Source of the DNA: Octopus bimaculoides
Lineage: Eukaryota
Direction of reading: 5' to 3'
NCBI RefSeq assembly: GCF_001194135.2
Contig: NC_069010.1
Location: 3,476,315 to 3,513,495, forward strand
DNA: 37,181 nt
The notes beneath the pieces were generated by a model. That model was given only the letters and a program-made list of their open reading frames with translations. It was not told the DNA's origin and ran no database searches. The position numbers and the translations under genes were made by a program. Of this stretch, positions 3,782 to 36,908 are shown piece after piece (the stretch's first letter is position 1; each line of letters opens with the position of its first letter).

Positions 3782-3863
3782 GGAGGTGTTAATATTTTTC
3801 TTGTTTGTGGCCAGAGCTTTCATCTCCTCAGCCTTCATGGGGGCTTACGTCTACACACCAGAG
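3782..3863 (+). CDS. SVOP: SVOP-like exon (R)EVLIFFLFVARAFISSAFMGAYVYTPE
   Basis: ctttgctccag| acceptor; GAG|gtaagt donor; 82 bp, phase 2 to 0. ARAFIS..F..AYVYTPE is the SVOP/sugar-porter-like signature. Confidence 0.93.
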
Positions 3864-4099
3864 GTAAGTAAACCAACAGAGGCTCATAAAGAAGGCTTTT
3901 GTTTTTTATTTCTTTAAATTTGATCATCCAATGTGATTGTTGTAGTTGTTGTGCTTCAAGTTAGTTTTGGTGGTGCAAATCAGATATGCAATCTATGTGG
4001 GTGTCTTTTCAATCCATTGACTGGTTTAAAAAGCCACATCAGATGCCATGATGGATCTAAGGTGTATGTACAATAGGTGGTCAGGCTCTTCATCTTTGC

Positions 4100-5014: not shown

Positions 5015-5528
5015 ATATATGTNNNNNNNNNNNNNNNNNNNNNNNNNNNNNNNNNNNNNNNNNNNNNNNNNNNNNNNNNNNNNNNNNNNNNNNNNNNNNN
5101 NNNNNNNNNNNNNNNNNNNNNNNNNNNNNNNNNNNNNNNNNNNNNNNNNNNNNNNNNNNNNNNNNNNNNNNNNNNNNNNNNNNNNNNNNNNNNNNNNNNN
5201 NNNNNNNNNNNNNNNNNNNNNNNNNNNNNNNNNNNNNNNNNNNNNNNNNNNNNNNNNNNNNNNNNNNNNNNNNNNNNNNNNNNNNNNNNNNNNNNNNNNN
5301 NNNNNNNNNNNNNNNNNNNNNNNNNNNNNNNNNNNNNNNNNNNNNNNNNNNNNNNNNNNNNNNNNNNNNNNNNNNNNNNNNNNNNNNNNNNNNNNNNNNN
5401 NNNNNNNNNNNNNNNNNNNNNNNNNNNNNNNNNNNNNNNNNNNNATATATATATATGTATGTAAAATAAATTCTAGTACTAACCTATAATAAATGAACAT
5501 GTATTAATTATCATCATCTGTATTTCAG

Positions 5529-5618
5529 ATTTATCCAACGTCCATGCGAGCCATTGGTCTGGGAGCATGTAGTACTATGGCTCGTATCGGGGCCATAATC
5601 ACACCTTTCATAGCTCAG
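5529..5618 (+). CDS. SVOP: SVOP-like exon [30 protein letters not shown]
   Basis: tatttcag| acceptor; CAG|gtgagt donor; 90 bp, phase 0 to 0. Closely matches SVOP [30 protein letters not shown]. Confidence 0.93.
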
Positions 5619-5714
5619 GTGAGTTCCTTGTTTCACAGTGGCAACACATCAGCAGATTCATTGTTTACTGTCTGATCCTTACTGTTCTACTTTGCCTCAT
5701 CCCATCCTGTACCA

Positions 5715-6794: not shown

Positions 6795-6807
6795 TTATTA
6801 TTATTAA

Positions 6808-6844
<37 letters not shown>

Positions 6845-6920
6845 ATTATTATTATTAATATTATTATTATTGTTATTATTATTATTATTATTATTGTTGT
6901 TGTTGTTATTATTATTATTA

Positions 6921-6991
<71 letters not shown>
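6795..6991. repeat. (TTA)n/(TTG)n microsatellite
   Basis: Direct reading. Similar (TAA)n tracts at about 16021-16170, 18028-18103 and 36910-36942. Confidence 0.95.
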
Positions 6992-7149
6992 GAGCGAGAG
7001 AGCAGTGAATGCCATCAAAGTGACACTGGGGTAAAATATACGAAGCCCATTATACCCATCATGACTTCTTATCTGAAAAGGACCTCGAGTCCGCTGCCCT
7101 AACCACTGGGCCATTGCGCCTCCAATAGTTCTTATTATTAAAGCGGCAA

Positions 7150-12572: not shown

Positions 12573-12780
12573 TTTTACTCTTTTACTTGTTTCATTCATT
12601 TGACTGTGCTGGGGTACCGCCTTTTAGTCGAGCAAATCGACCCCAGGACTTATTCTTTGTAAGCCTAGTACTTATTGTGTCGGTCTCTTTTTTGCCGAAC
12701 CGCTAATGTTACGGGGACATAAACACACCAGCATTGGTTGTCAAGTGAAGTTGGGGGGATAAACACAGACACACAAACAT

Positions 12781-12829
<49 letters not shown>

Positions 12830-12991
12830 CGACGAGTTTCTTTTAGTTTCCGTCTACCAAATCCACTCACAAGGCTTTGGCCGGCCCAAGGCTATAGTAG
12901 AAGACACTTGCCCAAGGTGCCACGCAGTGGGATTGAACCCAGAACCATGTGGTTGGTAAGCAAGCTACTTACCACACAGCCACTCCTGCCC
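12573..12991 (-). mobile_element. Full-length composite SINE with internal CA/TA microsatellite and (GTAAAAGA)n-type tail
   Basis: Head (rev) ggcaggagtggctgtgtggtaagtagcttgct; core gtggcaccttgggcaagtgtcttctactatagcc; same family as 29190-29619 and 31820-32226. Confidence 0.88.
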
Positions 12992-13310
12992 CTTTTTTTA
13001 TTAATATTTCATAATTATATACTTTCGTTAAAGAAATATCCACACTAGGGTATTAAAATACAGTTAGACTGTAGCAAACAGTCTTCACATAGTATGCTTG
13101 ACTGGGGGGAGATTGGTTTGGCTAGACTAAGTACAGGTGTTTTATGTTTGCTATGAAAAAAAAAAAAGATTTTCATAATTTCATGTCCAACTAAAATAAG
13201 ACACAAAATTTTGGATCCCACACCCCAACCCAATTCTCCCAAGCCCCACCGGTGGGGCGTGTGCTCCATGTTGGAAATCACTACTAGAATATCGCCGACA
13301 TCCAACACAC

Positions 13311-15659: not shown

Positions 15660-16015
15660 GAATTAATTCAAATTTTTGCCACAAAGGCAGCTTGAAGAAA
15701 GTGGGAATGAGTCGATTACAATGACTCCAGTGTGTAACTGGTACTTACTTTAATTGACCCTGAAAGGATGAAATAATAATAATAATCTTTTCTATTTTAG
15801 GCACAAGGCCTGAAGTTTTAGGGAAGGGGACTAGTCGATTACATCGACCCCCAGAATTTCACTGGTACTTAATTTATTGACCCAAGCCCCACCCCACCCA
15901 AAGGACAAAAGGCAAAGTTGACCTTGGCGGAACTTGAACTCAGAACGTAGCAATGGGTGAAATACCGCTAAGCAATTTCATCCACCATGCTAACAACTGT
16001 GCCAGTTCGCTGCCT
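15660..16015 (-). mobile_element. Two diverged SINE copies (GGCGGCGAGC-related subfamily)
   Basis: Reverse-strand head gcagcgaactggcacagttgttagc and core ttgacctttcagggtcaattaaagtaagtaccag; embedded in TAA tracts. Confidence 0.7.
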
Positions 16016-16024
16016 TATATAATG

Positions 16025-16168
<144 letters not shown>

Positions 16169-17298
16169 GTAGTAGTAGTAGTAGTAGTAACCACAACAAT
16201 AACAACAACAAGAATTTAATGGCTGTTCTTTTAACTGAATGACTTTGTACTAGGCTACCAGCTTCCGAATCGTCCCACCAATTAAAAATTCCAATAACGA
16301 CAAAGCAAAGAGCCAATTAGTGGAGGGTGTCTGGAAGGGTTGGGAGGTGAGTGGTGGTGGTGGTGGTGGTGGTGGGGAGGACACTGGGAATGCTGTGGTG
16401 TGTTAATTAGGTTATTCTTTTAATTGGTTCTGTTGTGTTGTGTTGGCTACCTCAGACACATTTCAGACTATGGTATATATATTTATACATACACACACAT
16501 GCATGTGCACACACACAGACACACACACACGCACACACGAATGTGTGTGTGTGTGTGTGCATGTGTATATGTATATTTAGGTATATACATACATACATAT
16601 GTGTGTGTGTGTATATATACACACACACACACACACACACATACACATATAGGCGCAGGAGTGGCTGTGTGGTAAGTAGCTTGCTTACCAACCACATGGT
16701 CCTGGGTTCAGGCCCACTGCAACGGCCACGCTCAAAATGGGGTATTTTACGTGCCACCTGCACAGGAGCCAGTCCAGTGGCACAGGCAATGATCTTGCTT
16801 GAATGTCTTTACATGTGCCACCGGCACAAGTGCCAGGAAGGCGACGTTGGGCACAGGTGCCATCACAATTTCGCTTTCGTTTGCCCTAAATAAATAATGC
16901 AGAATGGGACAAGAACGTAAAACATCAAGACAGTTAGAAAAGGAGTTTGACAGGCACCGGCAAGGCCAGGGGTCACGTCAGTTTCTATAGTCTGTTTTGA
17001 CTTGGTTTCTGTGGCTGACTGCCCTTCCTAATGCCAACCACTTTATAGAGTGTACCGGGTGCTTTTTATGAGGCATCAGCACCAGTGCTTTTAGCATGGT
17101 ACCATCAGCAGCGCTTTATATGTTTGCATGCATCCACACACACATGCACACTTCCATGCTCATTCAACCAATAACTGTGCTTTTTTGCTCTCTTCATGTG
17201 CAGGAACTGCGCGGACATGTTTACCACAGCGCCCGATGAGACTTCGTCTAAACAGATGTAGAAGAACACCCAAACTAAAGGACACAAAGTAAGTATCA

Positions 17299-18027: not shown

Positions 18028-18031
18028 TATT

Positions 18032-18110
<79 letters not shown>

Positions 18111-18427
18111 ATTGGTCAACATTCGGTAGTTTGAGACAAATTTCACTACATCATCTGCTACACCTCTGTGTACTGGGGTGTGTGTTCTTTTCTGTTGTTG
18201 GGAGTGCGTGAACTCTTCCTGGTATTGTATTGTGTTAGTTTTTATTTTTCTCATTTGAGGTGTGGTGCAGTCTTTTGTTTTATTACTGCTTGTATTGCGT
18301 ATTGAGTGCGTAATGTGTTGGTTAACTGGATTGCTGGTGGAAGTTTATTTCACCGGGTAATTGCTGTATAGAGTGTGCCTTCTGCCTGTGGGTTGTTTTG
18401 TTTAGGTTGTATTATTGAATTGATAGT

Positions 18428-18730
18428 CTGAACAGGATAAACTACACCTATTTTGCAGAGAAAAGTGTAGGTGGCTATTTGTAGTGGGTAGTTTAGCTTA
18501 ATCGGTCAAAGCATCGTGACATGTAATCACGGGGATGTGGGTTCATGTCCACAGCTAGCCACCTACACTTTTCTCTGCAAAATAGGGGTAGTTTATCCTG
18601 TTCAGGCTATTTTATTAGCATTATTCTGCGATTGAGAATTTTAAAAAATCACTTCTTTAACTTTCTAAAAGACATCTCAACGCTTCTAAAAGCAAACTTC
18701 GTTTGTTTATTTACGTTTGTCGTAATTTGA
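18428..18730. mobile_element. 303-bp insertion with exact 14-bp TSD, 50-bp inverted repeat and tRNA-like core
   Basis: ATTGAATTGATAGT at 18414-18427 and 18731-18744; IR arms 18428-18477 and 18556-18605 (49/50). Confidence 0.88.
18487..18560 (+). pseudogene. tRNA-Thr(TGT)-like sequence (non-canonical cloverleaf)
   Basis: Acceptor GGTAGTT/AGCTAGC (one mismatch); D-stem GCTT/AAGC; anticodon arm TCGTGA-CATGTAA-TCACGG (6 bp, loop centre TGT); T-arm GTGGG-TTCATGT-CCAC (one C short). A-box TAGCTTAATCGG; TTTT at 18569-18572. Confidence 0.6.
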
Positions 18731-18974
18731 ATTGAATTGATAGTGTTATGTGTAGGATGTAGGCTGTTCTTAGCAGGGCTATATTTCAGTGTTGGCTCCA
18801 AATTCTGTAGAGTATCTGTGGAAATAACTTTAGAAAATGGTATAATGTTTATGTGTAACTAAATGGTCTCACCAAAAATCTAAAATGGACTTGGTTTATA
18901 TGGGAAGCAGCATACAGCCAAATTCAGCCGAACCATTTAACGAAAGTATCCAATAATCCATCTATCCAAGTTAC

Positions 18975-20780
18975 AGATGCATTTGATAATGTAGTCCTAG
19001 ATACACTTTGCCAGAATAAATCACATCTGAAACACATTTGATCGGAGGTCTGCTTGATAAAATCTGTCCTAGGGCTAAACAACAACAACCGAGGATGATA
19101 CATTGAATAAAATAGTCTTAGATACACTATGTCTGAATCCAAGATGGGGGGGGTGATCGTGGCTGCAACATCTATGACCATAGGTCTCCTGAATCAGGAC
19201 TGACCTGGGGCTAAACATCGACAAAAAGGAAGAGCACATTAGATAATGTAGTCCTAGATACACTATATCTGAGTATCAGAGCCTATCTTGTGGGGAGTGG
19301 GTGGTGGTGGTTGTGGTGGTGGGGGCTGTACAACTATATAAAGTATTCCTAGATACACGATGTCTGAATAAAAGACAAATTGCTCCTGGCTGAAGCACAT
19401 TTGATTAGGGGCCTACTGGACAAGGACTAACCTGGGGCTAAATAACAGTCAAGAACAAGAGCAAATTAGATAATGTAGTCCTAGATACACCATGCCTGAA
19501 GAAAAGACAAAATGGTCACAGTTTGAATATATTTAATCCGGGGTCAACAGGATCAGGACTGACCATGGGCTAAACAACAACAATATGGAAGGGCACATTA
19601 GACAATGTACTCCTAGATAAACCATGCCTGAAGAAAAGAATGATCACGGCTGGAACACATCTGATCAGTGGTCAAGTGGATCAGGACTGACCTGGGTTTA
19701 AAATATTATCAGGAAGAAGAGCACATTAGACAATGTACTCCTAGATAAACCATGCCTGAAGAAAAGAATGGTCACGGCTGGAACACATCTGATCAGTGGT
19801 CAAGTGGATCAGGACTGACCTGGGTTTAAAATACTATCNNNNNNNNNNNNNNNNNNNNNNNNNNNNNNNNNNNNNNNNNNNNNNNNNNNNNNNNNNNNNN
19901 NNNNNNNNNNNNNNNNNNNNNNNNNNNNNNNNNNNNNNNNNNNNNNNNNNNNNNNNNNNNNNNNNNNNNNNNNNNNNNNNNNNNNNNNNNNNNNNNNNNN
20001 NNNNNNNNNNNNNNNNNNNNNNNNNNNNNNNNNNNNNNNNNNNNNNNNNNNNNNNNNNNNNNNNNNNNNNNNNNNNNNNNNNNNNNNNNNNNNNNNNNNN
20101 NNNNNNNNNNNNNNNNNNNNNNNNNNNNNNNNNNNNNNNNNNNNNNNNNNNNNNNNNNNNNNNNNNNNNNNNNNNNNNNNNNNNNNNNNNNNNNNNNNNN
20201 NNNNNNNNNNNNNNNNNNNNNNNNNNNNNNNNNNNNNNNNNNNNNNNNNNNNNNNNNNNNNNNNNNNNNNNNNNNNNNNNNNNNNNNNNNNNNNNNNNNN
20301 NNNNNNNNNNNNNNNNNNNNNNNNNNNNNNNNNNNNNNNNNNNNNNNNNNNNNNNNNNNNNNNNNNNNNNNNNNNNNNNNNNNNNNNNNNNNNNNNNNNN
20401 NNNNNNNNNNNNNNNNNNNNNNNNNNNNNNNNATAAACCATGCCTGAAGAAAAGAATGGTCACGGCTGGAACACATCTGATCAGTGGTCAAGTGGATCAG
20501 GACTGACCTGGGTTTAAAATACTATTAGGAAGAAGAGCACATTAGACAATGTACTCCTAGATAAACCATGCCTGAAGAAAAGAATGGTCACGGCTGGAAC
20601 ACATCTGATCAGTGGTCAAGTGGATCAGGACTGACCTGGGTTTAAAATACTATCAGGAAGAAGAGCACATTAGACAATGTAGTCCTAGATACACCATGCC
20701 TGATCACAACTTGAATACGGTTGATCCGAGGTCAGCTGGATCAGCAGTGACCAAGGGCTAAACAACAAGAAGAAGAACAA
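18975..20780 (+). repeat. Tandem array of ~128-bp units (at least 10 visible units, interrupted by a gap)
   Basis: The CTAGATA-type marker recurs at about 18997, 19117, 19254, 19349, 19481, 19613, 19741, then 20557, 20685; the spacing is exactly 128 bp in the homogeneous part. Confidence 0.92.
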
Positions 20781-25935: not shown

Positions 25936-26405
25936 ATTCACACACACATCATATATATAAGTGCATACATATGAAGATTTTGACTTTAGACTTATAGTTG
26001 CAATTACTGGCAGGAATTCTATCGGGAACTAACTGACCCAACCCCGTTATGGAGTAATTAGGCTTAACAAAATCAAAATGGACAGAGTTAATTAGTGGAA
26101 TTATGGCTACGAATCATTAGATGCACTCATTAAAGACACACATAAATGTATGTCATTAACGACACTTTAATCATTCTGAAAGTTTAGCCTGTAATAAGTA
26201 TATATACACGTTGATTAAAGATTAAAGCATATTCACTGTTTCGGCCACTTGATGTCATCCACAGTAATGATATAATTTTCACTGGATCTACGTCAGGAAA
26301 TCCACAGGCGCAGGAGTGGCTGTGTGGTAAGTAGTTTGTTTACCAACCACATGTCATTCATGTTAAGGAAGTCTGGAGGATATCTCACTGGTTCACCAGG
26401 AAACA

Positions 26406-26960
26406 GAAATACCAGCAGATGTTAATATAAAGCTGAAGATCAGGGAAAAAGATAATAGCTACGCTGAACTATTGAGAAATCTGCAGTTACTGTACCCAGA
26501 TTACAAGTTCAGGTTTATACCTGTAATTATTGGGGCCCTGGGATATGTAACGCATTGCCTAAATACTAATCTTGAGAAATTAGGCTTCTCAAAACCAGAA
26601 AGGAGGAAGTTAATTCGAAGACTACAGATCCAATCCATCACTGGAAATATAAAAATCTGTAAAACTTTCCAGAAGTTTATCACTTAAGTGTATATGAGAA
26701 TGTTTAGATTTGCAGCTATATGCAGGAGAATATATACATGAAGCAAAACATACAAATCTGCACATATACATACATACATACATGCATGTATACAAAAATA
26801 TCCTGTTGTTGGATGTTGAAATTCCAATGAAGAAGCCTTGGATCTAGGTTAGAAACCGGTTCTGTCTCTATTGGCAAGAAATCTTGAAATAAATCTAAAC
26901 AATGATATACATACATATACATACATACATACATGCATACATACAAACATACCTAGCTAT
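26406..26960 (+). mobile_element. 5'-truncated REL-endonuclease LINE 3' end with (TACA)n tracts
   Basis: Frame 26406-26687 reads EIPADVNIKLKIREKDNSYAELLRNLQLLYPDYKFRFIPVIIGALGYV...KICKTFQKFIT*; the K..Y and P.IIGALG motifs are typical of RLE LINEs. Confidence 0.8.
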
Positions 26961-29015: not shown

Positions 29016-29189
29016 TCAAATTGATCTAAATAAAAATCTTCCATCAAAATTTTATCTTAATTCATGTTCCAACACCAGTTTAATGATGACAAAGTTATTT
29101 TACTAAATTCTTCAATATTTACGAAATTAATTGAAACGAAGGAAGTGTACGTCAACAGAAATATGGTAAGAGAATGCTTAATGATACAC

Positions 29190-29619
29190 TTTTACTCTTT
29201 TACTTGTTTCAGTCATTTGACTGCGGCCATGCTGGAGCACCGCCTTTAGTCGAGCTAATCGACCCCAGGACTTATTCTTTGTAAGCCTGGTACTTATTCT
29301 ATCGGTCTCTTTTGCCGAACCACTAAGTTACGGAGACGTAAACACACCACCATCGGTTGTCAAGTGATGGCGGGGGGGAAAAACACAGACACACAAACAT
29401 ATATACACACACATACATATACATATATACATATATATATATATATACATATATATGACGGGCTTCTTTCAGTTTCCGTCTACCAAATCCACTCACAAGG
29501 ATTTGGTCGGCCCGAGGCTATAGTAGAAGACACTTGCCCAAGGTGCCACGCAGTGGGACTGAACCCGGAACCATGTGGTTGGTAAGCAAGCTACTTACCA
29601 CACAGCCACTCCTGCGCCT
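29190..29619 (-). mobile_element. Full-length composite SINE with internal microsatellite
   Basis: Same family as 12573-12991; it interrupts a ~95-bp repeated module (gacaaagttattttactaaattc...cagaaatatggtaag occurs on both sides). Confidence 0.88.
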
Positions 29620-30969
29620 GATGTCAAAGTTATTTTACTAAATTCCTCATTACTTACTTAATTGCAACAAAGACTGTGTATATATGAACAGAAATATGGT
29701 AAGGAAAGGTTTAATAATGACAAAGTTAATTTACTAAATTTTTCATTCCATCCAATCTACGCTATAATTTATGCATCTATGAGAATTTGAAATCTTTAGC
29801 TCAGACAATTAATTCCAGACATCTTTGTCAGAACTGACAACGAAATCAAAACACACCCCGCTAGTCTTTTTTTTTTTTTCAGTCACAGCTGGTCGAACTA
29901 GTAATAAACAACAAAGTTTCTTACCTTTTGTAGTTTGTTGCTATGGATTCATCCATTGGTATAATATCCCATGCTGTGTGCACTTTCTAATCGGATTTTC
30001 AGTGCTCAGTGCAACACTGTGGTGTTCAAGAACTGACCATCACAGATTCTATGCCATAGAAACAAAAGCAATATCAGGGTCAGTAGTGGGAATTTGTGAA
30101 GACGGCAAGGTGCCATATTCTATGAATAAAAGACTAGAATTCTTCGAGGCAGTACCTCAGCAGAGTTGTTGTCTAATGACTGAAACAGCTAAATGGTAAT
30201 ATACATATNNNNNNNNNNNNNNNNNNNNNNNNNNNNNNNNNNNNNNNNNNNNNNNNNNNNNNNNNNNNNNNNNNNNNNNNNNNNNNNNNNNNNNNNNNNN
30301 NNNNNNNNNNNNNNNNNNNNNNNNNNNNNNNNNNNNNNNNNNNNNNNNNNNNNNNNNNNNNNNNNNNNNNNNNNNNNNNNNNNNNNNNNNNNNNNNNNNN
30401 NNNNNNNNNNNNNNNNNNNNNNNNNNNNNNNNNNNNNNNNNNNNNNNNNNNNNNNNNNNNNNNNNNNNNNNNNNNNNNNNNNNNNNNNNNNNNNNNNNNN
30501 NNNNNNNNNNNNNNNNNNNNNNNNNNNNNNNNNNNNNNNNNNNNNNNNNNNNNNNNNNNNNNNNNNNNNNNNNNNNNNNNNNNNNNNNNNNNNNNNNNNN
30601 NNNNNNNNNNNNNNNNNNNNNNNNNNNNNNNNNNNNNNNNNNNNNNNNNNNNNNNNNNNNNNNNNNNNNNNNNNNNNNNNNNNNNNNNNNNNNNNNNNNN
30701 NNNNNNNNNNNNNNNNNNNNNNNNNNNNNNNNNNNNNNNNNNNNNNNNNNNNNNNNNNNNNNNNNNNNNNNNNNNNNNNNNNNNNNNNNNNNNNNNNNNN
30801 NNNNNNNNNNNNNNNNNNNNNNNNNNNNNNNNNNNNNNNNNNNNNNNNNNNNNNNNNNNNNNNNNNNNNNNNNNNNNNNNNNNNNNNNNNNNNNNNNNNN
30901 NNNNNNNNNNNNNNNNNNNNNNNNNNNNNNNNNNNNNNNNNNNNNNNNNNNNNNNNNNNNNNNNNNNNN

Positions 30970-31153: not shown

Positions 31154-31819
31154 TGTATATATATATTCTTTTATTCTTTTGCTTTAGTCATTTGGTATCT
31201 GGAGTGTCATATTATTCAGAGCATACCCTCTATTTTCTTGAAATATATTTAATATTGCTTCCTGTACAATGAGGGTCTGAGAGATTGTCTGGCATTAATT
31301 GATTTATTACCACCAACTAGAATACAGTTGACATTCCCAACTGGTTTGATTCTAAATGGTTGAAGACTACATGCTGCATAAAATCTTCTAAATATAAATA
31401 ACTACGTCACCATTCTTTTATCTTGACCACCACTATTTTTCCTCTGTTATTATTCTCTAAATTATAATCGGTTTAATAAGATATGAATAATTTCCTAAAC
31501 ACTTTCTGCCACGGATATAACATAAGGAAACAATATAATTATTGATGTGAATTTGTTAAAAATGGCTTATCCTTTATGTTTGAAATCTATACGGTCATCT
31601 GGATCTGAAGAGAGTGGTCTCTTTCAAGTTGATGTAATGTTTTCACTAATTAATTAAACGGAGCTGCTTGAAACGGCCGTAATGTATTGACACCTGTACA
31701 TCCTTGTTACTTATTTACATTTGGTTCGCCTAACTTGGAGCTGTGCAGACTATACTGAACTGACAAGGTGCCTCAATTTAAGTGCCTAGTTCAACTGAAT
31801 CTTAATTATATTTCATATA

Positions 31820-32226
31820 TACTCTTTTACTTGTTTCAGTCATTTGACTGCGGCCATGCTGGAGCACCGCCTTTAGTCGAGCAAATCGACCCCAGGATTT
31901 ATTCTTTGGAAGCCTAGTACTTATTCTATCGGTCTCTTTTTGCCGAACTGCTAAGTTACGGGGACGTAAACACACCAGCACTGGTTGTCAAGCGCTGCTG
32001 GGGGGACAAACACAGACACACAAACATATACATACACACACATATATATATACACATATATACGACGGGCTTCTTTCAGTTTCCATCTACCAAATCCACT
32101 CACAAGGCTTTGGTCGGCCCGAAGCTATAGTAGACGACACTTGCCCAAGGTGCCACGCAGTGGGACTGAACCCAGAACCATGTGGTTGGTAGGCAAGCTC
32201 CTTACCACACAGCCACTCCCGCGCCT
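31820..32226 (-). mobile_element. Full-length composite SINE with internal microsatellite
   Basis: Same family as 12573-12991 and 29190-29619. Confidence 0.88.
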
Positions 32227-32229
32227 ATC

Positions 32230-32670
32230 TATGACTGTATTATCTAATGTGCCTTTCCTTGTTTAGTTTCAAGTCAGTGCGGATCTAGCAGACCTACGAT
32301 AGAAGATGTTCCAGCTATGACCATCCTGTCTTTTATTCAGGCTTAGTGCATCTAGGACTACATTATCTAATGTATCTTTTCTTGTAGCCATTGTCGTTTA
32401 GTCCCAGCACGGTACAGATTCAGCAGACTTATAATCAAAAGTTTTTCAGCAATGACCATCCTGTCTTTTATTCAGACATAGTGTATCTAGGACTACATTA
32501 TCTAATGTGTCCTCTGTAGCACTTTTTGTTTCGCCCAAGGTCAGCCCTGTTGGGGCTGGTCCAGTAGATCTATGTCCAAAGGTGCTCCAGCTATGACCAT
32601 CCTGTCTTTCATTCAGACACAGTGTACCTAGAACTACATAATCCAATGTGTCCTTTCCTAGTTTGAGACA
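32230..32670 (-). repeat. Short diverged tandem array (~135-141 bp units) of the same family as 18975-20780, inverted
   Basis: The reverse complement reads attagataatgtagtcctagatacactatgtctgaataaaagacaggatggtcat..., matching the diverged units at 19000-19600; markers at about 32352, 32487 and 32628. Confidence 0.82.
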
Positions 32671-34919: not shown

Positions 34920-36249
34920 TTGCGAGTAAAAATAAATACAAAAAAGGTGGGTTTTTTTTGTATGATTGTGTATAGAGGAATATATTATTTTGCTTAAAAG
35001 AGTTCCAACACTGTCTGTTTTTTATGTTTTATTTATATTCCTGCAGAACCAATGTGGGGTATAGAATATGGAATATACAATATATAATATAATATACAAT
35101 ATACAATATAAAATAAAATAAAATAAAAATGGATGGCACCATGAAAGAAAGTATTGAATGTGTTCAATATAAAGGATCAAATATATAAATATATAAATAT
35201 AAATATATANNNNNNNNNNNNNNNNNNNNNNNNNNNNNNNNNNNNNNNNNNNNNNNNNNNNNNNNNNNNNNNNNNNNNNNNNNNNNNNNNNNNNNNNNNN
35301 NNNNNNNNNNNNNNNNNNNNNNNNNNNNNNNNNNNNNNNNNNNNNNNNNNNNNNNNNNNNNNNNNNNNNNNNNNNNNNNNNNNNNNNNNNNNNNNNNNNN
35401 NNNNNNNNNNNNNNNNNNNNNNNNNNNNNNNNNNNNNNNNNNNNNNNNNNNNNNNNNNNNNNNNNNNNNNNNNNNNNNNNNNNNNNNNNNNNNNNNNNNN
35501 NNNNNNNNNNNNNNNNNNNNNNNNNNNNNNNNNNNNNNNNNNNNNNNNNNNNNNNNNNNNNNNNNNNNNNNNNNNNNNNNNNNNNNNNNNNNNNNNNNNN
35601 NNNNNNNNNNNNNNNNNNNNNNNNNNNNNNNNNNNNNNNNNNNNNNNNNNNNNNNNNNNNNNNNNNNNNNNNNNNNNNNNNNNNNNNNNNNNNNNNNNNN
35701 NNNNNNNNNNNNNNNNNNNNNNNNNNNNNNNNNNNNNNNNNNNNNNNNNNNNNNNNNNNNNNNNNNNNNNNNNNNNNNNNNNNNNNNNNNNNNNNNNNNN
35801 NNNNNNNNNNNNNNNNNNNNNNNNNNNNNNATACACACATGCACACACATGCATCATATATGTATATATATATATATATATACATATATACGACAGGACT
35901 CCGTGAGCCTCCGTCCACCAAATCCACTCACAAGGCTTTGGTCGGCCCGAGGCTATAGTAGAAGACACCTGCCCAAGGTGCCACGCAGTGGGACTGAACC
36001 CGGAACCATGTGGTTGGTAAGCAAGCTACTTACCACACAGCCACTATCTGGTAGGATTTATGTGGGTAGCAGTGGTCGCTTAATCTCTGACATGGGTTGT
36101 CGTTAACAAGACGACAATTTTCAGGTTATTAACATCATGTTCAGAGATGAAACAACATTTTTTCCATGGACGTAGGGAATGTTTCTGAAAATGACAGTTG
36201 TATATATATACTTAATTCCTTCTCCTTCTCAACATCAGATATATACATG

Positions 36250-36812
36250 TATGTATGCATATGTGTGCATATATATATGTAAACTTAGGTATCCACAAGT
36301 TTTCAGCAGGCTTTCAAGTGCTTAGAACCCTCCTGATAATCCTTGCTGCCCCTAAGAGACAATCATTCTGTTGGAGCCTTACCAGGCATTCTATTCCAAT
36401 CTCCTTCAGCCATTCGTCTATATCTTGGCTTACTGTTCCCAATGACCCAATAATTATATGCCCGACCTTTACTTTTCACATGCTCCAAATTTACTTTTCA
36501 CATGCTCCAAATTCTTCCTATTTCAAATTTCAAGGGATTGTATTTTCTTTGTTTTTCTTCCTCTTTCTTTAAGTTCCTGGAATCAAACAGTGAGCAGCTT
36601 CGCCTTCCTTGTCTTTAATCATTATCTCTGGTCTTTTATTTTCTAATTTCTTCTCCATTTGAATAGGAAAGTCCCACAAAATCTTACATTTCTCCGACTC
36701 CAGTACTCTTTCGACTCGGTGATTGTCCCATGTGTTTCCAGCTACAAATCCCCATTTCTGGCACAGTTTCCAGTGTAAAACTTTTACAACCTGGTCGTGT
36801 CCCCATTTTTTA
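36250..36812 (-). mobile_element. 5'-truncated, decayed REL-endonuclease LINE (R4/Dong-like)
   Basis: Reads HDQVVKVLHWKLCQKWGF..W.NHRVERVLESEKCKILWDFPIQ...RPEI, then after frameshifts EEKQRKYNPLKFEIGRIW..IIIGSLGTV...CLLGAARIIRRVLST* (stop at about 36314). Confidence 0.85.
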
Positions 36813-36908
36813 TATTCTTCTTCATCATCTTCATCATCATCATCATCATCATCATTATTATTATTATTAATAGTCAAGAAGAAGAGCTACGTCAATCCTT
36901 TTTAAAAA

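What the first reader, a model, noticed from the sequence alone, without database searches (positions are those of the whole stretch)
18414..18744. Unusual 303-bp insertion: tRNA-Thr-like core caged by a 50-bp inverted repeat, with an exact 14-bp target duplication
Seen: TSD ATTGAATTGATAGT on both sides, and removing the insert restores the host LINE reading frame (ILHITLSIQ*), so this is a true insertion. Inside, 18428-18477 is the reverse complement (49/50) of 18556-18605, i.e. of the tRNA 3' end plus trailer. The core folds as a cloverleaf with a TGT anticodon, an A-box, a near B-box and a TTTT terminator, but with a 6-bp anticodon stem. An unrelated 125-bp AT-rich segment follows. There is no poly(A) or simple-repeat tail, and the IR is not at both termini, so it fits neither a standard SINE nor a MITE, and its head differs from the other SINE heads in the window. 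Inference: a new tRNA-derived mobile family, a SINE with a 5' inverted duplication from template switching, or a captured foreign or organellar tRNA locus. A read-through RNA would fold into a long stem that sequesters the tRNA 3' end.
Basis: partly seen in the sequence, partly recalled or inferred. Interest (0 to 1): 0.75.

Follow-up and report, generated by a model that had tools for sequence, protein, structure and literature searches.

The report
Retroposed tRNA-like element with inverted head
A young 303-bp insertion in an octopus genome carries a degenerate tRNA-like core whose 3' side is repeated upside-down at the insert's 5' edge, most likely an accident of reverse transcription during integration rather than a new kind of mobile element.

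Summary
The sequence features are real. There is an exact 14-bp duplication (18414-27 and 18731-44). A 50-nt inverted repeat matches 49/50 and extends to 60 nt at 93%. ARAGORN and Rfam both call a tRNA-Thr(UGU)-like core (31.8 bits, just above threshold; 0 of 1000 shuffles are called). The core is degenerate: A33, a 6-nt T loop and a G.G acceptor mismatch. The "host LINE reading frame" is not supported: it is 18 codons between stops, with no LINE signal.

The window is a gapped draft scaffold of an Octopus species. My best reading (about 0.55) is a single target-primed retroposition of a Pol III-type tRNA-like RNA, in which the other cleaved DNA end also primed on that RNA. Three things support it:
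- The inverted arm starts at the first inserted base.
- Its complementarity runs 4-5 nt into the target duplication (ATAGT against GCUAU).
- The arm lies upstream of any A-box-directed transcription start, so a Pol III transcript could not pass it on.

That would make the hairpin a one-off integration scar (twin priming or cDNA snap-back).

Copy number and an empty orthologous site could not be tested, because no octopus genome was searchable. A heritable hairpin family (about 0.15) or Penelope-style two-strand priming (about 0.10) therefore remain open. Interest is modest.

The parts
18414..18427 (.). Left copy of the 14-bp target-site duplication ATTGAATTGATAGT. Its last 5 nt (ATAGT) can pair with GCUAU at 18606-18610.
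18428..18477 (+). Inverted 5' arm. It is the reverse complement of 18556-18605 (49/50, one A/C difference at 18446) and starts at the first inserted base.
18478..18485 (+). Inversion junction and putative 5' leader TTTGTAGT. TGT (18480-82) still matches the right arm, which suggests joining at a microhomology.
   Evidence: inference
18486..18563 (+). Degenerate tRNA-Thr(UGU)-like core. The A box TAGCTTAATCGG is at 18494-18505, the anticodon TGT at 18522-24 and the near-B box GGTTCATGTCC at 18540-50. It has A33, a 6-nt T loop and a G.G mismatch in the acceptor stem.
18556..18605 (+). Right arm of the inverted repeat, made of the 3' acceptor strand plus the trailer. With looser matching it extends from 18551 to 18610.
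18569..18572 (+). First T4 tract, a Pol III terminator-like site 6 nt after the tRNA-like core.
18606..18613 (+). GCTAT is the proposed internal priming site for the top-strand end. It overlaps the second T4 tract (18610-13), a possible 3' end of a read-through Pol III RNA.
   Evidence: inference
18611..18730 (+). AT-rich 3' segment (27.5% GC) with a third T4 at 18639-42. It matches nothing in the window or in L010. It ends in AATTTGA, which runs into the TTGAA-like duplication.
18731..18744 (.). Right copy of the 14-bp target-site duplication.

Best explanation
This is one young retroposition event in an Octopus genome, and the hairpin is a scar of that integration rather than a designed or inherited part.

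Proposed steps (all inferred from anatomy, none observed):
1. A Pol III-type RNA was made from a degenerate tRNA-Thr-like pseudogene or SINE-like source. It consisted of a short leader, the tRNA-like core, a trailer read through weak T4 terminators, and an AT-rich 3' part.
2. A retroelement reverse transcriptase copied it into a staggered break by target-primed reverse transcription. This produced the 14-bp duplication and the direct copy 18478-18730.
3. The other DNA end of the break (top strand, ...GATAGT-3') annealed to GCUAU at 18606-10 of the same RNA species, or of the nascent cDNA after a snap-back. About 50-55 nt were copied, up to the acceptor stem.
4. The two cDNAs were joined near TGT, leaving an inverted duplicate of the tRNA 3' end plus trailer at the insert's 5' edge.

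Any transcript that reads through the locus would fold into a stem of about 50 bp that encloses the tRNA-like core.

A sub-hypothesis concerns the AT-rich 3' 120 nt. It may be the 3' end of a different RNA, for example the partner retroelement, fused by template switching at the second T4, as in U6/tRNA-LINE chimeric retrocopies.
For: - The exact 14-bp duplication brackets the whole 303 bp (rare in shuffles).
- The inverted arm begins at the first inserted base. Its complementarity continues into the duplication as ATAG plus a T.G pair. Chance for such a 5-nt match is about 0.5-2%. Twin priming and microhomology-mediated 5' joining both predict this (PMC2912911). A family-intrinsic repeat does not.
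- The direct copy starts 1-8 nt before the tRNA-like +1, where an A-box-directed Pol III start or 5' leader would be expected (established knowledge of type-2 promoters). The A and B boxes and the cloverleaf are real. The left arm lies upstream of that start, so a Pol III transcript could not carry it.
- The arm's inner end falls inside the acceptor stem (18556), a plausible stalling point for reverse transcriptase.
- The outer end of the right arm abuts the second T4.
- The arms differ at 1 of 50 positions and the duplication at 0 of 14. This is consistent with both having formed in one recent event.
- In twin-primed L1 insertions the inverted and direct cDNAs are known to share sequence (PMC12016303).
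Against: - No other copy, source gene or empty orthologous site could be examined, so the one-off status is inferred from a single locus.
- In human L1-driven events, 5' inversion of short elements is very rare (Alu 0.02%). The overlap between the two cDNAs is usually about 12 bp. Here the whole inverted piece, 50-60 nt, is overlap.
- There is no poly(A), and the nick site (AAT/AAT) is not the L1 consensus. The enzyme is therefore unknown, and no partner LINE tail was found in the window or in L010.
- Three T4 tracts in the sense strand argue against efficient Pol III synthesis of the full 250-nt RNA.
- The 4-5 nt microhomology could be chance at the 1-2% level.
Confidence: 0.55

Rival explanations
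1. The hairpin is heritable. On this reading the insert belongs to an undescribed mobile family whose consensus is IR-tRNA-like-IR plus an AT-rich tail. It would be transcribed from upstream (Pol II or read-through), and the long stem would serve as a recognition or processing structure.
For: - The arms are nearly identical (49/50) and the stem is very stable.
- The whole unit is bracketed by one duplication.
- The layout fits no standard SINE or MITE.
- One copy met in about 29 kb of non-gap sequence hints that the underlying family may be common.
Against: - The arm lies upstream of the internal-promoter start site, so a Pol III transcript could not copy it.
- The complementarity runs on into the target duplication, which a family consensus cannot explain.
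- The right arm is internal, not terminal.
- No second copy was found in the window, in 20 kb of O. vulgaris, or as called ORFs in the protein collections.
Confidence: 0.15
2. This is Penelope-like (PLE) style integration of a non-autonomous tRNA-like RNA. The PLE enzyme cleaves and extends both DNA strands and starts reverse transcription at internal sites. An inverted 5'-truncated partial copy next to the direct copy would then be a regular outcome, not an accident.
For: - PLE insertions often carry an inverted 5'-truncated copy at the 5' end and show a microsatellite bias (PMC8557442).
- Here the nick lies in ATT/ATT, and the target (ATTGA)2 is microsatellite-like.
- The two cDNA start points, 18730 and about 18606, are both inside one RNA.
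Against: - There is no hammerhead ribozyme, pLTR or tandem arrangement, and no PLE ORF nearby. Rfam finds only the tRNA.
- The 'tail' would be about 120 nt instead of 30-40 nt.
- To my knowledge no tRNA-headed PLE passenger has been described.
Confidence: 0.1
3. The inverted arm is not part of the insertion event. It arose later by a DNA-level fold-back or replication template switch, or it is an error of the gapped short-read assembly.
For: - The scaffold is a draft with 16 gaps.
- Inverted repeats are prone to misassembly.
- PLE-type and hairpin structures are known to trouble short-read assemblies.
Against: - The arm abuts the intact left duplication exactly, and the duplication is perfect on both sides.
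- The arms are not identical, with 1 mismatch in the core and 2 at the inner edge, unlike a graph fold-back artefact.
- No gap lies within 1 kb of the insert.
Confidence: 0.07
4. It is a functional tRNA-Thr gene, or a captured foreign or organellar tRNA locus.
For: - Two tools call a cloverleaf with a UGU anticodon.
- A T4 tract follows within 6 nt, as at real tRNA genes.
Against: - The Rfam score is only 31.8 bits.
- The core has A33 instead of the near-universal U33, a 6-nt T loop and a G.G pair in the acceptor stem.
- It sits inside a duplication-flanked insert.
- IMG/VR gave no match for the D arm. In about 186,000 prokaryotic genomes the only hits were a generic D-arm match in a tRNA-Met and a non-tRNA site.
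- At 50% GC with full D and T arms it is unlike metazoan mitochondrial tRNAs (general knowledge).
Confidence: 0.03

Closest known systems
5'-inverted LINE-1, Alu and processed-pseudogene insertions made by twin priming (Ostertag & Kazazian 2001; PMC2912911; PMC12016303)
   Same: One duplication flanks the whole insert. The inverted piece sits at the 5' edge. There is microhomology between the target's top-strand end and the internal priming site. The inverted and direct cDNAs share sequence.
   Different: There is no poly(A) or TTTT/A nick site. The template is a Pol III-type RNA of about 250 nt. The inverted piece lies wholly inside the direct copy (50-60 nt overlap against a median of 12 bp). 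The host is a cephalopod and the reverse transcriptase is unknown.
tRNA-derived SINEs of cephalopods and other molluscs (OK/OR SINEs, Ceph-SINEs, MetaSINEs; cited from memory and from PMC4824008 and PMC4758252 as listed)
   Same: It has a tRNA-like head with A and B boxes, a non-tRNA 3' part, flanking target duplications and a size of about 250 nt.
   Different: The head is unrelated to the abundant SINE in this window. There are three sense-strand T4 tracts. No A-rich tail or shared LINE tail was identified. Copy number is unknown. An extra inverted arm is present.
Chimeric retrocopies made by template switching (U6-L1, tRNA-L1 and similar; general knowledge; compare PMC4476161)
   Same: A full-length small Pol III RNA is fused upstream of the 3' end of another sequence, and the whole is flanked by one duplication. 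The boundary falls at the small RNA's oligo-U end (the second T4 at 18610-13).
   Different: The 3' partner is unidentified and has no poly(A). A third, inverted piece is present.
Penelope-like element insertions with an adjacent inverted 5'-truncated copy (PMC8557442, PMC11167929)
   Same: An inverted partial copy abuts the 5' end of a direct copy. Both DNA strands appear to have primed cDNA. The target is an AT-rich, ATT-containing, microsatellite-like site.
   Different: No hammerhead ribozyme, pLTR or tandem arrangement is present, and the cargo is a tRNA-like RNA. The distance between the two start sites is about 120 nt, not 30-40 nt.
MITEs and foldback elements
   Same: It is short and non-coding, with a long inverted repeat and a strong hairpin.
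   Different: The right arm is 120-125 nt from the 3' end, so the repeats are not terminal. A 14-bp duplication fits no cut-and-paste superfamily (2-11 bp, general knowledge).

Membership tests
tRNA-derived SINE | A tRNA-related 5' head with internal Pol III A and B boxes | tested here: met
   ARAGORN calls tRNA-Thr(tgt) at 18486-563. Rfam tRNA scores 31.8 bits (gathering score 29). ARAGORN of 1000 shuffles. The A box TAGCTTAATCGG and the near-B box GGTTCATGTCC are present.
tRNA-derived SINE | Flanking target-site duplication of variable, LINE-type length | tested here: met
   An exact 14-bp duplication is present. A repeat of 14 nt or more occurs in 5 of 2000 shuffles.
tRNA-derived SINE | A multi-copy family (hundreds of copies or more) sharing the same consensus | not testable with these tools
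   No eukaryotic genome could be searched. The available data gave no second copy: about 29 kb of the window, 20 kb of O. vulgaris (L010), the viral, metagenome and prokaryote scans, and the protein collections.
tRNA-derived SINE | A 3' tail that is A-rich, a simple repeat, or shared with a partner LINE | tested here: inconclusive
   There is no poly(A). The end AATTTGA plus ATTGAATTGA gives about three TTGAA-like units, partly hidden in the duplication. The LINE 3' end in the window and in L010 is not similar.
tRNA-derived SINE | A body free of sense-strand Pol III terminators, so that the whole unit is transcribed | tested here: not met
   T4 tracts lie at 18569-72, 18610-13 and 18639-42. 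How efficiently T4 terminates Pol III in octopus is unknown.
MITE (non-autonomous DNA transposon) | Inverted repeats at both termini | tested here: not met
   The left arm is terminal, but the right arm ends at 18605-10, which is 120-125 nt before the 3' end.
MITE (non-autonomous DNA transposon) | A short duplication of superfamily-specific length (2-11 bp) | tested here: not met
   The duplication is 14 bp.
Twin-primed (5'-inverted) retrocopy | A single duplication flanks an insert made of a 5' inverted piece and a 3' direct piece from the same RNA | tested here: met
Twin-primed (5'-inverted) retrocopy | Microhomology between the upstream target end and the internal priming site | tested here: met
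   ATAGT (18423-27) pairs with GCTAT (18606-10) through 4 Watson-Crick pairs plus one T.G pair. Chance is about 0.5-2%.
Twin-primed (5'-inverted) retrocopy | L1-type hallmarks: a poly(A) tail and a TTTT/A nick site | tested here: not met
   The insert has no poly(A), and the inferred bottom-strand nick is ...TCAAT/AATAC. The mechanism may still apply with a non-L1 enzyme.
Penelope-like element or retrozyme | A hammerhead ribozyme and a pLTR or tandem arrangement | tested here: not met
   Rfam at E up to 10 gives no ribozyme hit in 18300-18850. No tandem copy is present.
Functional tRNA gene | A canonical cloverleaf: U33, a 7-nt T loop, an intact acceptor stem and a high model score | tested here: not met
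   The core has A33, a 6-nt T loop, a G.G acceptor mismatch and a score of 31.8 bits.

The most novel reading that the evidence does not exclude
The inverted arm is not an accident but recurs. Either octopus genomes hold a heritable 'hairpin-caged' tRNA-like retroelement family, or a Penelope-like enzyme that primes on both DNA strands mobilises tRNA-like Pol III RNAs. In the second case many copies would carry inverted partial copies starting at the same internal site. Such copies would seed perfect RNA duplexes of about 50 bp, possible substrates for ADAR or Dicer, in a lineage known for heavy RNA editing.
Probability: 0.12. Interest if true: 0.65.

Novelty: new member of a known kind. Interest (0 to 1): 0.3.

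Why it matters
If the main reading holds, this is a clean example from outside mammals of second-strand priming, or snap-back, during retroposition of a very short Pol III-type RNA. In human data this outcome is almost absent for Alu. It shows how a single integration can create a perfect hairpin of about 50 bp around a tRNA-like core. Such hairpins are raw material for double-stranded-RNA pathways, but nothing here shows that this copy is used. It does not define a new class of element. The more interesting alternatives, a recurrent hairpin family or PLE-driven tRNA-like passengers, would matter for repeat annotation in cephalopods. A simple genome-wide search would decide between them.

Tried and rejected
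- Other copies:
  - Self-BLAST of the window found none.
  - Exact-pattern scans of IMG/VR, JGI metagenomes and GTDB genomes with the D arm, the terminal 18-mer and the arm core gave only chance or generic hits.
  - The insert's 61/67-aa ORF was not on record as a called gene and found no homologue in the word-indexed protein search.
  - The exhaustive HMMER search found only repetitive, unrelated proteins.
- More octopus DNA through transposon proteins:
  - One 20-kb O. vulgaris locus was obtained (L010). It is paralogous, not orthologous, and holds no copy.
  - Six other loci were not octopus.
  - The O. bimaculoides protein was not on record.
  - The search with the MFS-transporter exons returned no octopus orthologue, so the orthologous site could not be reached.
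- Host LINE: rejected.
- Hidden RNA families in or near the insert, such as ribozymes or snoRNAs: nothing credible.
- Mitochondrial-mode tRNA search: it gave the same single call.
- A second tRNA-like unit in the trailer, suggested by the repeat GGGTAGTTTA at 18486 and 18586: no tool called one, and the repeat is at chance level.
- An in-window yardstick for SINE duplication length: the 17-mer pair at 29154 and 29687 proved to be part of a longer duplication of about 534 bp, not a clean target duplication.
- Literature search for the core sequence string: no paper holds it.

Full report
**What the window is.** The 37,181-base window holds 8,528 N in 16 gaps, so it is a scaffold of a draft assembly. 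It is full of microsatellites, a 128-bp satellite, tRNA-headed SINE copies and LINE remnants. A LINE ORF remnant at 26367-26684 is 93% identical over about half its length to an Octopus vulgaris 'hypothetical predicted protein', and is also related to an O. bimaculoides protein. The window's SINEs match copies in a 20-kb piece of O. vulgaris chromosome OX597824.1 at 80-94%. The source is therefore an Octopus species. Exons of an MFS/SV2-like transporter lie on the + strand at about 2.3, 3.8 and 5.5 kb. I could not establish whether the insert at 18.4 kb lies in an intron of that gene or downstream of it.

**The observation.**
- The direct repeat ATTGAATTGATAGT is exact at 18414-27 and 18731-44. 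A repeat that long occurs anywhere in only 5 of 2000 dinucleotide shuffles of 18300-18850.
- Between the two copies lie 303 bases. Positions 18428-18477 are the reverse complement of 18556-18605 at 49/50. With looser matching the repeat spans 18423-82 against 18551-18610 (60 nt, 93%).
- The insert folds at -124 kcal/mol (z = -13.9) into one long stem enclosing the core.
- ARAGORN calls tRNA-Thr(tgt) at 18486-18563 in standard and mitochondrial modes. Rfam's tRNA model scores 31.8 bits against a gathering score of 29. ARAGORN calls none of 1000 shuffles of the core.
- The tRNA likeness is therefore real, but it is weak. Position 33 is A, the T loop is one base short, and the acceptor stem has a G.G pair. 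This is a pseudo-tRNA of the kind found at SINE heads, not a working gene.
- The A box (18494-505) and a 9/11 B box (18540-50) are present by eye. T4 tracts follow at 18569-72, 18610-13 and 18639-42.
- The last 120 nt are 27.5% GC and match nothing else available.

**What is not confirmed.** With the flanks joined, ILHITLSIQ* is only the end of an 18-codon stretch between stop codons. The flanks have no Pfam match and no similarity to any repeat in the window or in the O. vulgaris locus. The case for insertion therefore rests on the duplication alone. That case is good, but no empty site was seen.

**Anatomy that bears on mechanism.** Four details matter.
1. The inverted arm begins at the very first inserted base.
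2. Its complementarity does not stop there. The last bases of the left duplication, ATAGT (18423-27), pair with GCTAT (18606-10) immediately outside the right arm, through four Watson-Crick pairs and a terminal T.G pair. Random 5-mers from this window do as well in about 0.5-2% of trials. A repeat that belonged to a family consensus has no reason to continue into the target. A repeat made by priming from the cleaved target end does.
3. The direct copy starts 1-8 nt before the tRNA-like +1. That is where a type-2 Pol III promoter starts transcription (established knowledge). The left arm lies upstream of that point, so a Pol III transcript could not carry it to a daughter copy.
4. The arm's inner end (18477/18556) lies five bases into the acceptor stem, a plausible stalling point. 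The junction TTTGTAGT retains a TGT shared with the right arm, as expected for joining at a microhomology. The right arm's outer end abuts the second T4.

**Most likely mechanism (inferred).**
- A retroelement endonuclease made a staggered break with a 14-bp offset.
- The bottom-strand end primed reverse transcription of a tRNA-like Pol III RNA from its 3' end to its 5' end, giving the direct copy.
- The top-strand end ...GATAGT-3' then annealed at GCUAU of the same RNA species and copied about 50 nt (twin priming). Alternatively, the finished cDNA snapped back on itself and was then captured by that end through the same microhomology.
- Joining the two cDNAs left an inverted duplicate at the 5' edge.

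The two versions predict the same product, and I cannot tell them apart.

Published work on L1 shows three relevant things. Microhomologies are enriched at the 5' junction of inverted copies (PMC2912911). The two cDNAs can share sequence, with a median of 12 bp. Inversion is almost absent for Alu, at 0.02% (PMC12016303). This locus would therefore be an unusual case of a known process: the template is very short and the overlap is complete.

The arms differ at 1 of 50 positions and the duplication at 0 of 14. That fits a single recent event.

**The AT-rich 3' part.** It could be the LINE-derived tail of a SINE-like family. It could be the downstream flank of a source pseudogene, transcribed through three weak terminators. 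Or it could be the 3' end of another RNA, fused by template switching at the oligo-U end of a 135-nt Pol III RNA (18480-18613), as in U6- or tRNA-LINE chimeric retrocopies. The boundary at the second T4 suits the third option, but nothing tests it. The only LINE 3' end available (26685-26918 and its O. vulgaris relative) is not similar. The insert's end, AATTTGA, runs into the duplication ATTGAATTGA. A short TTGAA-like tail, or tail-to-target microhomology, may be hidden there.

**Rivals.**
- *A heritable IR-tRNA-IR family* cannot be excluded without a genome search. Points 2 and 3 above argue against it.
- *Penelope-like integration* is a serious variant. PLE insertions often carry an inverted 5'-truncated copy at the 5' end (PMC8557442). 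A purified PLE protein cleaves and extends both strands, prefers ATT and starts internally on the RNA (PMC11167929). Here the nick lies in ATT/ATT and the target is microsatellite-like. However, there is no hammerhead ribozyme, pLTR or tandem copy. The 'tail' would be about 120 nt. PLE initiation is also reported to need no homology to the target.
- *Later DNA rearrangement or misassembly* is unlikely. The arm abuts an intact duplication, the arms are not identical, and no gap is near.
- *A real or foreign tRNA gene* is not supported.

**Limits.** None of the collections I could scan by DNA holds cephalopod genomes. Apart from the window, only 20 kb of octopus sequence could be fetched, and it holds no copy. 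All other retrieved loci were from other organisms. They are listed as next steps.

**Verdict.** The features are real. The interpretation as a new class is not supported. The best reading is an undescribed tRNA-like retrocopy with an integration-time 5' inverted duplication, which is a known kind of event in an unusual setting. Interest is modest (0.3). It would rise if the arm proved recurrent.

Noticed in passing
window ~2250-2370, ~3790-3880, ~5526-5640 (+): Three exons of an MFS/SV2-like transporter (..VIDKIGRKLTIGGEF.., ..FVARAFISSAFMGAYVYTPE.., [31 protein letters not shown]). The best database hits are only 55-78% identical, and no octopus orthologue was returned. The last exon or exons were not found, so the insert at 18.4 kb may be intronic.
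   Followed up: partly
window 19388-19830 and 20433-20703; degenerate units from ~18975; 32283-32650 (-): A 128-bp satellite array starts about 230 bp to the right of the insert. It spans an assembly gap and has a second, inverted patch 12 kb away.
   Followed up: partly
window 12574-12999, 29191-29732, 31809-32228 (all -), plus fragments elsewhere: An abundant tRNA-headed SINE of about 420 bp carries an internal (TATG/TG)n microsatellite and an A-rich end (..GTAAAAGAGTAAAAG). It is 80-94% identical to copies in O. vulgaris. Its head is unrelated to the insert's core.
   Followed up: partly
window 26367-26918 (+); L010 10150-10591: A LINE 3' fragment has an intact 106-codon ORF tail. The O. 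vulgaris paralogue (82% DNA identity) is annotated there as a 108-aa 'hypothetical predicted protein', which is a transposon remnant called as a gene.
   Followed up: partly
window 36100-36886 (-): A second retroelement ORF remnant (..KILWDFPIQMEKKLENKRPEIMIKDK.. / ..IIIGSLGTVSQDIDEWLKEIGIE..) is broken by frameshifts.
   Followed up: no
window 29100-29185 vs 29635-29718: A duplication with a period of about 534 bp surrounds one SINE copy. It includes an exact 17-mer at 29154 and 29687. It looks like a tandem or segmental duplication rather than a target-site duplication.
   Followed up: partly
window 18486-18495 and 18586-18595: GGGTAGTTTA, the 5' end of the tRNA-like core, recurs in the trailer. 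Its near-complement lies in the left arm, so alternative pairings are possible. A 10-mer repeat in this region is about chance level.
   Followed up: partly
window 18028-18105; 15990-16220; 6795-7030: There are long (TAT)n/(ATT)n tracts, one of them 300 bp left of the insert. Many (CA)n/(TATG)n tracts give spurious Rfam microRNA hits (mir-297, mir-466) at relaxed thresholds.
   Followed up: no
L013 4438-5034 (ENA ERZ25073825, not octopus): A contig fetched through a LINE-tail homologue is densely packed with short genes, one of which has Pox_A32/ATPase_2 domains. This suggests a large DNA virus or an integrated viral region carrying the retroelement-like ORF.
   Followed up: no
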